From the NCBI GenBank assembly GCA_964019335.1, contig OZ025695.1, forward strand, positions 124,001 to 188,000: a stretch of 64,000 nt of DNA, given 5' to 3'. This document shows, piece after piece, positions 40,378-42,003 of this stretch. Below the pieces are notes generated by a model. It had not been told where the DNA came from. It saw only the letters and a list, made by a program, of their open reading frames with translations, and did not search any database. Each line of letters starts with the position of its first letter. Position 1 is the stretch's first letter. The position numbers and the translations under genes were made by a program. The stretch comes from Diplonema japonicum (lineage: Eukaryota; Protista; Euglenozoa: Diplonemea).

Positions 40378-41018
40378 TGTTGTTTGTGCAAGCCCGTTTT
40401 CACCTACAGTAGGGATAAATGGACAAAGCTGCCTCTACTCTTTTTTTGCAATAACAATTCTTTTCAAAAATTTGTTTACTTGTTCCAGCAAAAAAAAAAA
40501 AAAAAAAAAAGAAAACCGAGGGGGAAAAGAGAGGGAAAAAAAAAAGAAAAAAAAGATGTGAAATGGGAAAAAAAAGCTTTAATGAAAATAAAAAAAAAAC
40601 CCCCCAGTTTTTCCCCCCTCTTTTTTTCCCTCTCCACTTATTTATGCAAACTATTTAAAATAAAAATAAAAAATAGGGGAAAAAAAAAAGAAAGAAAGTT
40701 GGAAAGACGAAAAGGAAAGGGGTAAACTAAAAAAGTAACACGGCAGGTGTACAGAAAGGAACAAAAAAAAAGGGGGGGATTCTTTTTCTTTTTCTTTTTT
40801 TGCCCCTCTTTCTTTTGTTACTTTCTATACACCATCCTTTTTTCTTTTTGTTCCCCTTTCCCTTGCCAATCCTCTTGTTAAAAAATCAAATGAAGTCTAA
40901 AGATAAGAAGCCTGGGAAAAAAAAAAGTTTTTTTTTTCTTCTAACCCCTGACTCTGGCAAGCGGTATAAGGTTTTGCCTTTTTTTTTTCTTTTTCCATTG
41001 TTTTTTCGTTTCCTATTC

Positions 41019-41107
41019 GACAACCATCAGTTCCTGGCTGATGCAGAGTTCAAACAAAAATCTTTTGTTTCTCTGTTAAGGGTAGCCAACCAACGTCACA
41101 AGGTGCC
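41019..41107 (-). promoter_or_regulatory. Candidate SECIS element (GUGA-type core) in the PITH gene 3' UTR
   Basis: GGCACC-UU-GUGAC-GUUGGUUGGCU-ACCCUUAA-CAGAG...CUCUG-CAUC-AGCCAGGAAC-UGAU-GGUUGUC, read as helix I, UGAC/UGAU quartet, ~11-nt helix II and an apical extra stem. Folded by eye. Confidence 0.5.
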
Positions 41108-41243
41108 TTTCAGAAAGAAAAATCGCAGCAAGATTTTTTTTTTTTTAAAAAAAAATGAGAATAAAAAAAAAGGACTTTTTTTTTTTTAATTTATGGTTCA
41201 GAGACGACGCAAGACTCTAATTTCCCATGGAAATGAGTCTTGC

Positions 41244-41878
41244 TTAGGCCCCTCAGCCTTGCTTAGGATTCCACTTAAATTGATCGCCGTTAGCAACCCC
41301 GAGAATAGTCTGTGCGCAATTTTTTTTCCCCCCCCCCACCCCACCCCCTCCACATACCAACCCGCTCAAGCAGGTTGTCGGTGAGTCCTCGGTATTCGAC
41401 TTCACGTATAAATGTATTGTGTTCACAGATTGAAATTTCACAAATCGAGTCAAAACAACTGCTTTTTGTACGTCCCCTGCAGGGGACCAGTCAAGCTCAA
41501 TGTCCTGAAGCGCCGGTAGGCTCTCGCAGTCCTCGAAGGCTAGGTTAGACTGGTTGATGAAAACCTTGATCCCGTTCGGCTTCCTCCCGTCGTTTGGTGC
41601 GGTGAACTCCAGCGAATACACCTTCACATTCTGCCTGAATGGGATGTTCAGCAAGAGCTCCTCATCGGTGTCGCTTTCCAGACAGTTCCCGGTGGACCCA
41701 GAGTCTGTTTTTTTTTTCTTTTTTTCTTTTTTTTTTCTTTTTTTTTTTTTTTTTTTTTTTGCAGACCCGAAGTTGGGAAGATATTCGACACTGGACGTTC
41801 AGGGCTCTCATTCAGGCATTCTACATTTCCCCGGTCAATGTGCTCAAAGAGGTCCCCGTAGGGGCACGCTCCAGCCAT
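41244..41878 (-). CDS. PITH-domain protein (3 exons); ends at TGA 41253-41255, or at TAA 41244-41246 if the TGA is Sec
   Basis: ECLNE, CLESDTDEELLLNIPFRQNVKVYSL, PNGIKVFIN, FVKFQSVNTIHLYV. GT-AG introns at ~41705-41766 and ~41309-41356. Confidence 0.9.
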
Positions 41879-42003
41879 CTTTTCTTTTCTTTCTTTTCCC
41901 CCTTATTAAAATAAAGGATAAGCCCACACCAAGGGGGAGGAAATAAATTGACTGTGACACTTCGATTTCCACCCCCCTCTCTCTCTCTCTCGTCCCCGTA
42001 TTT

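What the first reader, a model, noticed from the sequence alone, without database searches (positions are those of the whole stretch)
41019..41878. Candidate new selenoprotein: PITH-domain protein with C-terminal G-U-G-A* and a SECIS-like 3' UTR element
Seen: the frame ends AAG CAA GGC TGA GGG GCC TAA (K-Q-G-[UGA]-G-A-stop). About 150 nt downstream is a fold with helix I (GGCACC/GGUUGUC), a G-UGAC/UGAU non-Watson-Crick quartet, an ~11-nt helix II (GUUGGUUGGCU/AGCCAGGAAC) and an apical mini-stem (CAGAG/CUCUG). Known: near-terminal Gly-Sec-Gly tails occur in SelK, GUGA-type SECIS cores exist in some protists, and kinetoplastids have Sec machinery. Inference: the UGA is Sec, giving a PITH selenoprotein, a family I do not know of. 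The N-terminal MAGACPYG Cys could be a redox partner. Caveat: the apical AA lies ~18 nt from the core, with ACCC at the usual position, so the SECIS is non-canonical.
Basis: partly seen in the sequence, partly recalled or inferred. Interest (0 to 1): 0.88.

Follow-up and report, generated by a model that had tools for sequence, protein, structure and literature searches.

The report
Selenocysteine-tailed PITH protein in Diplonema
A small proteasome-associated (PITH-domain) gene of the marine protist Diplonema japonicum very probably reads its apparent TGA stop as selenocysteine, giving a G-Sec-G-A tail; such PITH selenoproteins are named in algae but have not been described in this lineage.

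Summary
A three-exon, minus-strand PITH gene (171 codons) ends GGC TGA GGG GCC TAA. A SECIS-like hairpin with a GUGA core lies 154 nt downstream.

The fold alone is not significant. What counts is its match to this genome's own SECIS style:
- The genome (Diplonema japonicum) has tRNA-Sec, SepSecS and a Sec-containing SPS2, plus Sec forms of SelT, SelK, three GPx genes and ten GILT genes.
- Rfam SECIS models miss the proven SelD and SelT genes too.
- Nine of 12 independent Sec-gene groups carry UGUGAC within 560 nt after the stop.
- In 277 kb scanned, only SelD, GPx1 and PITH combine U-GUGA-CG and C-UGA-W with both helices.

SelK in the same genome ends A-G-U-G-A-stop, the same tail that PITH gets on read-through. 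A close relative's spliced mRNA keeps the TGA, changes GGG to GGA (synonymous), and carries the hairpin with changes only in loops.

Five diplonemid orthologues, and about 25 of the 150 PITH clusters listed, stop at this same Gly.

I put Sec decoding at about 0.8. It is unproven: no orthologue DNA was reachable and there is no protein evidence. An algal paper already names a PITH selenoprotein family, so this is a new member of a known kind. The proposed N-terminal Cys partner is not conserved.

The parts
41767..41878 (-). Exon 1 of the PITH gene (ATG 41878-41876; encodes MAGACPYG...PTS plus the first base of Asp)
   Evidence: Sequence. Pfam PITH positions 7-45. Exact match to transcriptome protein P0001. 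RNA contig pieces cover 41769-41897.
41705..41766 (-). Intron 1 (62 nt, GUCUGC...ACAG, almost pure poly-A)
   Evidence: P0001 reads ..PTSDSGSTGN.. across it. X2 and X3 contigs skip it, leaving 8 unaligned letters that equal GG+ACTCTG.
41358..41704 (-). Exon 2 (core of the PITH beta-sandwich)
   Evidence: Pfam PITH positions 57-155, 85.2 bits. RNA contigs cover 41358-41698.
41310..41357 (-). Intron 2 (48 nt, GUAUGU...CACAG, G-rich; in frame, so it looks like coding sequence in the raw ORF)
   Evidence: Joint 41309/41358 skips 48 nt in runs X2 and X3. P0001 reads ..CLSGL|TILGV...
41256..41309 (-). Exon 3 coding part: TILGVANGDQFKWNPKQG, the flexible C-terminal tail
   Evidence: AlphaFold pLDDT is about 50 for residues 160-171. 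The tail aligns with the TXNL1 tail around Phe278.
41253..41255 (-). TGA, proposed selenocysteine codon (residue 172)
   Evidence: Unchanged in the relative's mRNA contig. Same context as the SelK Sec codon.
41244..41252 (-). GGG GCC TAA: Gly-Ala-stop after the Sec codon
   Evidence: The relative has GGA at 41250, which is synonymous. SelK has GGT GCC TAA.
41108..41243 (-). 3' UTR spacer with A/T homopolymer runs between the stop and the SECIS
   Evidence: The X3 mRNA contig runs to 41198 plus 40 unaligned letters. The next contig has 29 unaligned letters before 41127. Together these span the 70-nt low-complexity gap.
41019..41107 (-). SECIS element, house type. Helix I is 41107-41102 with 41025-41019. 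The 5' core U-GUGA-CG has GUGA at 41099-41096. Helix II is 41094-41084 with 41039-41030. The internal loop ACCCUUAA is 41083-41076. The long apical stem is 41075-41044. The 3' core is C-UGA-U, with UGAU at 41029-41026.
   Evidence: Folds. The core is identical to the SelD and GPx1 SECIS. UGUGAC is enriched behind Sec genes. The element is covered by an RNA contig in X3, with all 7 substitutions and the 5-nt indel outside the helices.
40977..41018 (-). Distal 3' UTR, with the probable poly(A) region near 40977-40990
   Evidence: The X3 contig ends at 40979, at an A-rich run. Contigs cannot prove an RNA end, so this is an inference.

Best explanation
The gene encodes a stand-alone PITH-domain protein, the proteasome-binding domain of TXNL1. 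Its mRNA is decoded through UGA 41255-41253 as selenocysteine. The product is 174 residues and ends ...F-K-W-N-P-K-Q-G-Sec-G-A.

Recoding is directed by a SECIS hairpin in the 3' UTR (41107-41019). This hairpin is of the lineage-specific type used by Diplonema japonicum: a GUGA rather than AUGA core, a long helix II and an extended apical stem.

What is shown:
- the gene model
- the PITH fold with a flexible tail
- the hairpin and its match to the SECIS of proven Sec genes in this genome
- the Sec machinery
- transcription of the element in a close relative

What is inferred:
- Sec is actually inserted.
- The tail works like the TXNL1 tail. That tail lies in the catalytic groove of the proteasomal deubiquitinase Rpn11 and ligates its Zn2+ through the terminal His. 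Here the selenolate would take the role of the His, as a metal ligand and/or a redox-reactive group.
For: 1. Sec machinery and Sec genes are present.
- tRNA-Sec scores 72.9 bits with anticodon TCA.
- SepSecS has E 1e-113.
- SPS2 carries an in-frame TGA in ELKG-U-GCK.
- A probable EFSec scores 170 bits.
- Sec forms exist for SelT, SelK, three GPx genes and ten GILT genes.

2. The hairpin matches the house SECIS.
- UGUGAC lies within 560 nt after the stop in SelD, GPx1, SelK, SelT and 9 of 10 GILT genes. That is 9 of 12 independent groups.
- Background is 12-13 per 64 kb per strand.
- Among 65 loose SECIS-like folds in 277 kb, only SelD, GPx1 and PITH have U-GUGA-CG with C-UGA-W.

3. Read-through gives G-U-G-A-stop. 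SelK of the same genome ends A-G-U-G-A-stop (TGA GGT GCC TAA). The pattern TGAGGNGCCTAAGC occurs three times in 62.5 Mb: PITH, SelK and one chance site.

4. A spliced mRNA contig from a relative about 97% identical keeps the TGA. It has GGG>GGA and CCT>CCC, both synonymous. A second contig covers the SECIS at a third of the CDS depth, and every change lies in a loop.

5. The protein family points the same way.
- Orthologues in D. ambulator, Rhynchopus euleeides, R. humris and Lacrimia lanifica all end ...NP(K/Q)QG.
- About 25 of the 150 PITH clusters listed (a euglenid, an amoebozoan, MMETSP algae, metatranscriptomes) end at the same Gly.
- Other homologues end in Cys (..KKC..KGC..EKC) or in His-rich tails.

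6. PITH is listed as a selenoprotein family in algae (PMC7539508).

7. The tail is flexible in the model (pLDDT about 50). It aligns with the TXNL1 tail, whose terminal His289 binds the Rpn11 Zn (PMC12700817). Rpn11 also recognises exposed Cys (PMC13648738).
Against: - There is no direct evidence of Sec insertion.
- No nucleotide sequence of any orthologue beyond a roughly 97% identical relative could be obtained, so use of TGA in the other species is unknown.
- The Paradiplonema papillatum homologue ends WDPSQQQPGM, with no Cys or Sec.
- Homologues that continue past the Gly have E, H, K or N there, not Cys. The Cys-ended ones cannot be aligned residue for residue in a flexible tail.
- TGA is an ordinary stop in this genome, used by 12 of 31 long ORFs.
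- The fold is no more stable than shuffled sequence.
- Rfam SECIS models give no hit.
- A single-sequence SelD model does not find the element, though it also misses GPx1.
- The AA motif lies 19-20 nt after the core rather than 11-12.
- The 3' halves of the SelT and SelK SECIS could not be resolved, so the house model rests mainly on the 5' core plus three or four complete examples.
- The SelK-tail match was noticed post hoc.
Confidence: 0.8

Rival explanations
1. Ordinary gene. TGA is the true stop and the protein ends at Gly171. The downstream hairpin with UGUGAC and the GA-stop extension are coincidences.
For: - TGA is a common stop here, used by 12 of 31 long ORFs.
- The fold energy equals that of shuffles.
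- Loose SECIS-like folds occur once per 4.3 kb.
- Rfam gives no SECIS hit.
- A stop within two codons after a stop is not rare.
- No Cys is seen at the aligned position in homologues that continue.
- P. papillatum has a different, Sec-free tail.
- A conserved C-terminal Gly could be functional in itself.
Against: Several coincidences would have to occur together:
- UGUGAC 154 nt after the stop, about 0.06 by chance for 300 nt.
- A fold that passes the descriptor, which about 3% of [AG]UGA sites do.
- An extended core identical to the SelD and GPx1 cores.
- A read-through tail identical to that of SelK.
- Loop-only changes in a relative.
- PITH being a reported Sec family.
Confidence: 0.15
2. 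The hairpin is a real structured 3' UTR element, for example a K-turn protein-binding site or a stability element. It is unrelated to recoding and the protein still ends at Gly171.
For: The helices are conserved in a close relative and the region is transcribed. GA/AG tandem motifs also occur in other K-turn RNAs (general knowledge).
Against: In the DNA examined, the same core was found complete only behind Sec genes. This reading also leaves the SelK-like tail unexplained.
Confidence: 0.03
3. Stop-codon read-through occurs but is not Sec-specific. A near-cognate tRNA would insert Trp, Cys or Arg at the UGA, giving a minor GA-extended isoform.
For: The short in-frame extension and the synonymous change in the relative fit any kind of read-through.
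Against: A SECIS of the house type is present. A two-residue extension has no obvious use without Sec. SelK uses the same tail with Sec.
Confidence: 0.02

Closest known systems
TXNL1 / TRP32 C-terminal PITH domain (PDB 1WWY; proteasome-bound structures such as 9E8G)
   Same: Same fold and family: phmmer E 2e-25 to 1WWY and Pfam PF06201. Same architecture of a beta-sandwich followed by a flexible C-terminal tail with a conserved Phe..DQFKW.. against ..NDFKR... In TXNL1 this tail lies in the Rpn11 groove and its terminal His289 ligates the catalytic Zn (PMC12700817).
   Different: There is no N-terminal thioredoxin domain. The tail lacks the terminal His and would carry Sec eight residues after the Phe. 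Proteasome binding was not tested for this protein.
PITH selenoprotein family listed in 'The algal selenoproteomes' (Jiang et al. 2020, PMC7539508)
   Same: A PITH-domain protein counted as a Sec-containing family that lacks a thioredoxin fold. MMETSP algal PITH proteins in the database stop at the same Gly, for example P0170 ..LKKTG.
   Different: The paper's held text does not give the Sec position or the SECIS, and it does not cover Euglenozoa. I could not confirm that the algal Sec sits in the same tail position.
Selenoprotein K (and SelS): Sec near the end of a Gly-rich disordered tail
   Same: D. japonicum SelK ends A-G-U-G-A-stop. PITH would end Q-G-U-G-A-stop, with nearly the same nucleotides (TGA GGN GCC TAA GC). 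Both have UGUGAC about 155-185 nt downstream.
   Different: The proteins are unrelated. SelK is a small membrane protein of the ER-associated degradation pathway and PITH is a soluble beta-sandwich. The resemblance is in the tail only.
Canonical eukaryotic type 2 SECIS (Rfam RF00031 and relatives)
   Same: Helix I, a tandem G.A/A.G quartet (UGA opposite GA), helix II, an internal loop with unpaired AA, and an apical stem.
   Different: The core is GUGA, not AUGA. The AA lies 19-20 nt after the core, against 15-17 in SelD and about 11-12 in the canonical form. The apical stem is long. No Rfam score was obtained, not even for the SelD and SelT 3' UTRs searched in this genome.
Kinetoplastid selenoproteome (SelK, SelT, SelTryp; Lobanov et al. 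2006, PMC1557815)
   Same: Sister lineage with Sec machinery. It has SelK and SelT, a C-terminal Sec in SelTryp, and atypical SelT SECIS elements.
   Different: Kinetoplastids are reported to have only three selenoproteins and no Sec-PITH. Their selenoprotein genes lack introns.

Membership tests
Eukaryotic selenoprotein gene | In-frame UGA followed by a further open, conserved reading frame up to a true stop | tested here: met
   TGA is followed by GGG GCC TAA. In a relative's mRNA the TGA, GCC and TAA are unchanged and GGG>GGA is synonymous. Only one close relative could be checked.
Eukaryotic selenoprotein gene | [quoted passage not shown] | tested here: met
   A hairpin at 41107-41019 has the UGA/GA quartet and helices I and II. 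Its core is identical to the SelD and GPx1 SECIS. An RNA contig in X3 covers it. Continuity with the CDS contig is inferred across a 70-nt homopolymer gap.
Eukaryotic selenoprotein gene | Sec machinery in the genome (tRNA-Sec, SepSecS, SPS2, EFSec, SBP2) | tested here: met
   tRNA-Sec with anticodon TCA, SepSecS, Sec-SPS2 and a probable EFSec. SBP2 was not searched.
Eukaryotic selenoprotein gene | Cys (or Sec) at the aligned position in homologues | tested here: inconclusive
   Some homologues end ..KKC..KGC or ..EKC, and many stop at the Gly. Those that continue have E, H, K or N after it. Tails cannot be aligned with confidence, and the stop codons of homologues were not obtainable.
Eukaryotic selenoprotein gene | Selenium demonstrated in the protein (75Se labelling or MS) | not testable with these tools
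   Needs an experiment.
PITH domain family (Pfam PF06201) | Profile match above the curated cut-off, and the beta-sandwich fold | tested here: met
   85.2 and 28 bits against a cut-off of 23.7. E 2e-25 to 1WWY. The AlphaFold model has pLDDT 85.7 and pTM 0.80 and is all-beta.
TXNL1 proper | N-terminal thioredoxin domain fused to PITH | tested here: not met
   The 171-aa protein is PITH only.
TXNL1 proper | C-terminal tail ending in a conserved Zn-binding His | tested here: not met
   The tail ends ..KQG(U)GA with no His. The conserved Phe is present.
Canonical SECIS (Rfam SECIS_1 and relatives) | AUGA core, AA or CC 11-12 nt after the core, and a score above the Rfam gathering threshold | tested here: not met
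   The core is GUGA and the AA lies at +19-20. There is no Rfam hit at E<=10. The same models find nothing in the whole genome or in the SelD and SelT 3' UTRs, so failing this test does not argue against function.
Diplonema japonicum house-type SECIS (defined here) | U-GUGA-C(G/A/C) 5' core 30-560 nt after the stop, a GA 3' core, helix II of at least 8 bp, and helix I | tested here: met
   The class rests on 9 of 12 Sec-gene groups for the 5' core, and on SelD, GPx1 and some GILT genes for the whole fold.
Algal PITH selenoprotein family (PMC7539508) | Sec at the family's characteristic position | not testable with these tools
   Neither the paper's text nor its held supplement gives the position.

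The most novel reading that the evidence does not exclude
A widespread and largely unannotated subfamily of stand-alone PITH proteins exists in diplonemids, euglenids, amoebozoans and many marine protists. It is truncated in databases at ...K-x-G. In this subfamily the Zn-binding terminal His of the TXNL1 tail is replaced by selenocysteine. The tail's selenolate would plug or sense the catalytic zinc of the proteasomal deubiquitinase Rpn11. That would be a selenoprotein acting directly on the 26S proteasome.
Probability: 0.3. Interest if true: 0.8.

Novelty: new member of a known kind. Interest (0 to 1): 0.6.

Why it matters
If true, it adds a selenoprotein to the diplonemid proteome that gene callers and transcriptome ORF callers cut three residues short. 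It also suggests the same truncation affects PITH proteins of many protists.

It shows that Diplonema uses a GUGA-core, elongated SECIS that the Rfam models miss. Selenoproteomes of this abundant marine group are therefore under-counted.

It places Sec in exactly the tail that, in human TXNL1, reaches into the Rpn11 active site and binds its zinc (2025 cryo-EM work). This gives a concrete, testable idea for what a C-terminal Sec could do at the proteasome.

Tried and rejected
The DNA of orthologues and of the ...KKxG-ending homologues could not be fetched.
- **Metagenome scans** gave nothing useful. A protein-alignment scan found no relative. A degenerate DNA pattern for FKWNP(K/Q)QG found two ciliate-like chance hits.
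- **Genome-contig scans** failed or found nothing.
- **Rfam SECIS models** gave no hit at the locus or in the whole genome. They also gave none in the SelD and SelT 3' UTRs, so this negative is uninformative.
- **MAFFT** could not align the three SECIS elements.
- **A single-sequence covariance model from SelD (R1)** found neither PITH nor the GPx1 SECIS. It is too sequence-specific to be a test.
- **SelT, SelK and two GPx genes (L016, L018):** I could not find convincing 3' halves for their SECIS elements. I considered 3' UTR introns, because GTAAGC follows the core in SelT and SelK, but could not show them.
- **Third genome hit of TGAGGNGCCTAAGC** lies antisense inside a coding region and is chance.
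- **Second PITH gene on C16** is an ordinary PITHD1-like gene.
It is Val or absent in the orthologues. Conserved Cys residues are C21 and C97, with C149 in most.
- **Kinetoplastid origin** is rejected in favour of a diplonemid.

Full report
**What is there.**
On the minus strand of the window lies a three-exon gene:
- exon 1: 41878-41767
- intron 1: 41766-41705, almost pure poly-A
- exon 2: 41704-41358
- intron 2: 41357-41310, G-rich and in frame
- exon 3: from 41309

The spliced product is identical to a 171-residue transcriptome protein of Diplonema japonicum (P0001). Both introns are absent from RNA-derived contigs of public runs. Both ORF pieces match Pfam PITH. The closest solved structure is the PITH domain of human TXNL1 (1WWY, E 2e-25). 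All long ORFs in the window lie on the minus strand. The homologues are diplonemids, not kinetoplastids.

**Is the hairpin more than chance?**
The hairpin at 41107-41019 folds as described. Its energy is no better than that of shuffled sequence (z = 0.26). A loose SECIS descriptor ([AG]UGA ... UGA with both helices) fires 65 times in 277,184 nt of this genome's DNA. Rfam SECIS models give nothing at E<=10. Taken alone, the fold proves nothing.

The Rfam negative is also uninformative. The same models find nothing in the whole 62.5-Mb genome. They also find nothing in the 3' UTRs of two genes that are certainly selenoprotein genes, SPS2/SelD and SelT.

**The genome uses Sec, with its own SECIS style.**
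The machinery and Sec genes I found:
- tRNA-Sec with anticodon TCA
- SepSecS
- a probable EFSec
- SPS2 with ELKG-U-GCK
- SelT with CIS-U-GY
- three GPx genes with NVAS.-U
- SelK
- ten GILT genes with FYGES(L/M)-U-PGC

The hexamer UGUGAC lies within 560 nt after the stop in most of these 3' UTRs:

| Gene | Distance after stop (nt) |
|---|---|
| SelD | 220 |
| GPx1 | 115 |
| SelK | about 185 |
| SelT | 441 |
| 9 of 10 GILT genes | 30-558 |

That is 9 of 12 independent gene groups. In the window the hexamer occurs 12-13 times per 64 kb per strand, which is about 0.11 expected per 560 nt. By my arithmetic the binomial probability of 9 of 12 is below 1e-6. UGUGAC, read as U-GUGA-C, is therefore the 5' SECIS core of this organism.

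For SelD and GPx1 a complete SECIS-like fold can be drawn, with 3' core C-UGA-A/U, helix I directly adjacent, and helix II of 8-10 pairs. Among the 65 loose hits, exactly three combine U-GUGA-CG with C-UGA-W. They are SelD, GPx1 and the PITH hairpin.

SelD also has a GUGA core and a late AA, at +15-17 against +19-20 in PITH (canonical is about 11-12), followed by a long apical stem. Earlier notes from this scan on other parts of the genome independently describe GUGA-type, elongated or giant SECIS candidates. I treated those notes as leads only.

**The tail.**
SelK of this genome is also spliced. It ends ...G-A-S-A-G-U-G-A-stop, coded GGT TGA GGT GCC TAA GC. Reading PITH through gives ...K-Q-G-U-G-A-stop, coded GGC TGA GGG GCC TAA GC.

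The 14-mer TGAGGNGCCTAAGC occurs three times in the genome: PITH, SelK and one chance site antisense to a coding region. If the PITH TGA were a plain stop, the chance that the next three codons spell Gly-Ala-stop is about 2e-4. I noticed this match post hoc.

**RNA and a close relative.**
Run X3 comes from organism B, about 97% identical. It holds a 642-nt contig that lacks both introns and therefore derives from RNA. The contig runs through the TGA to 41198.
- The TGA, GCC and TAA are unchanged.
- The only changes nearby are CCT>CCC (Pro) and GGG>GGA. The second is synonymous only if the codon after the TGA is read.

A second contig covers 41127-40979, the whole hairpin, at depth 15.7 against 44 for the CDS. 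Its seven substitutions and one 5-nt insertion all fall in loops or outside the helices. None falls in the 56 paired or core positions; I estimate the chance of that at about 0.07.

The unaligned ends of the two contigs (40 + 29 nt) add up to the 70-nt homopolymer gap between them. I therefore infer one transcript that the assembler broke. Contigs cannot show RNA ends, so the poly(A) site near 40980 is only a guess.

**The protein family.**
Orthologues from D. ambulator, Rhynchopus euleeides, R. humris and Lacrimia lanifica are 60-85% identical. All terminate at ...NP(K/Q)QG. Conservation runs right up to the called stop, which is the usual signature of a missed Sec codon. Paradiplonema papillatum differs (...WDPSQQQPGM).

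In a search of 1.8 billion representative proteins, about 25 of the 150 best PITH clusters end at this same Gly. Examples are ..LKKVG..LKKAG..WKPVKG and ..WEPVKG. They include the euglenid Anisonema, the amoebozoan Clydonella, MMETSP algae and many metatranscriptome contigs. Other homologues end in Cys (..EFKKC..KIKGC..LEKC). Sec-free lineages such as fungi and land plants continue with acidic or His-rich tails.

A 2020 survey lists PITH among the algal selenoprotein families, without giving the Sec position in the text held.

**How it probably works.**
The AlphaFold model is a confident beta-sandwich to about residue 159, followed by a flexible tail with pLDDT about 50. The tail aligns with that of TXNL1 around the conserved Phe.

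Cryo-EM work shows that the TXNL1 tail lies in the catalytic groove of the proteasomal deubiquitinase Rpn11. Its Met275 and Phe278 contact the groove and the terminal His289 coordinates the active-site Zn2+ (PMC12700817). A 2026 preprint reports that Rpn11 recognises exposed cysteines (PMC13648738).

I therefore propose that the diplonemid tail does the same job, with a selenolate eight residues after the Phe in place of the His, acting as a zinc ligand and/or a redox-reactive group. This step is inference only.

Cys5 is not conserved, whereas C21 and C97 are invariant among the six diplonemids.

**Verdict.**
I put Sec decoding at about 0.8, and the plain-stop alternative at about 0.15. TGA is a common stop here, so the plain-stop reading cannot be dismissed.

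Because a PITH selenoprotein family is already named in algae, this is a new member of a known kind. What is new is the lineage, the GUGA SECIS, and the position of Sec in the Rpn11-binding tail.

Noticed in passing
G000-wide; examples L012:2774-2858 (+), L015:1112-1254 (-), L032-L040: Diplonema japonicum SECIS elements share a U-GUGA-C core and are elongated. Rfam SECIS models find none in the whole genome, so standard pipelines would under-count its selenoproteome.
   Followed up: partly
L019 (G000:C111:172684-175899, minus strand), oriented positions about 1500-1810: The selenoprotein K gene has a low-complexity intron (GTGTGG...AACAG). Its last exon ends ..SGASAG-TGA-GGT-GCC-TAA, giving the C-terminal tail A-G-U-G-A.
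   Followed up: yes
L010 minus strand about 2142 (SelT 3' UTR); L019 minus strand about 1994 (SelK 3' UTR): Both have UGUGAC followed within 4-9 nt by GUAAGCU (a splice-donor-like GTAAGC), and no nearby 3' SECIS half. The SECIS may be giant, or completed by splicing of a 3' UTR intron. Unresolved.
   Followed up: partly
L015 (C67), L016 (C56), L018 (C106), L017 (C97): There are three glutathione peroxidase genes with an in-frame TGA (NVASK-U-GLT, NVASA-U-GLT, NVASL-U-YLS) and one paralogue with no in-frame stop in the match. L016 and L018 have no UGUGAC within 1 kb after the stop.
   Followed up: partly
L032-L042 (contigs C5, C95, C33, C78, C64, C11): Ten GILT thiol-reductase genes, several in tandem or as near-identical copies, all have TGA in FYGES(L/M)-U-PGC.
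   Followed up: partly
window 41705-41766 and 41310-41357; L019; L010: The introns seen here are short (48-62 nt in the PITH gene). They are built largely of homopolymer or low-complexity runs (poly-A, poly-G), with GU(A/C/G)UG donors and ACAG acceptors. One is in frame and reads as a Gly-rich insert in the raw ORF.
   Followed up: partly
window 40600-40870: A/T- and G-rich low-complexity inverted repeats give sub-threshold hits to many plant and animal miRNA models (best MIR408, 32 bits, E 1e-5, gathering score 64). These look like composition artefacts.
   Followed up: no
L029 (G000:C16:296302-299550), about 1395-2150 and about 2485-2560: A second, PITHD1-like PITH gene has a His-rich N-terminus, introns and an ordinary end (..DGASAGI-TGA). 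A tRNA-like sequence lies about 350 nt downstream.
   Followed up: partly
L013, L014 (JGI metagenome contigs Ga0314704_10020212, Ga0314686_10176910): These were chance matches to the FKWNPKQG pattern. They appear to be polyadenylated transcripts with in-frame TAA/TAG codons inside an otherwise open frame, as in organisms with reassigned stop codons such as ciliates.
   Followed up: no
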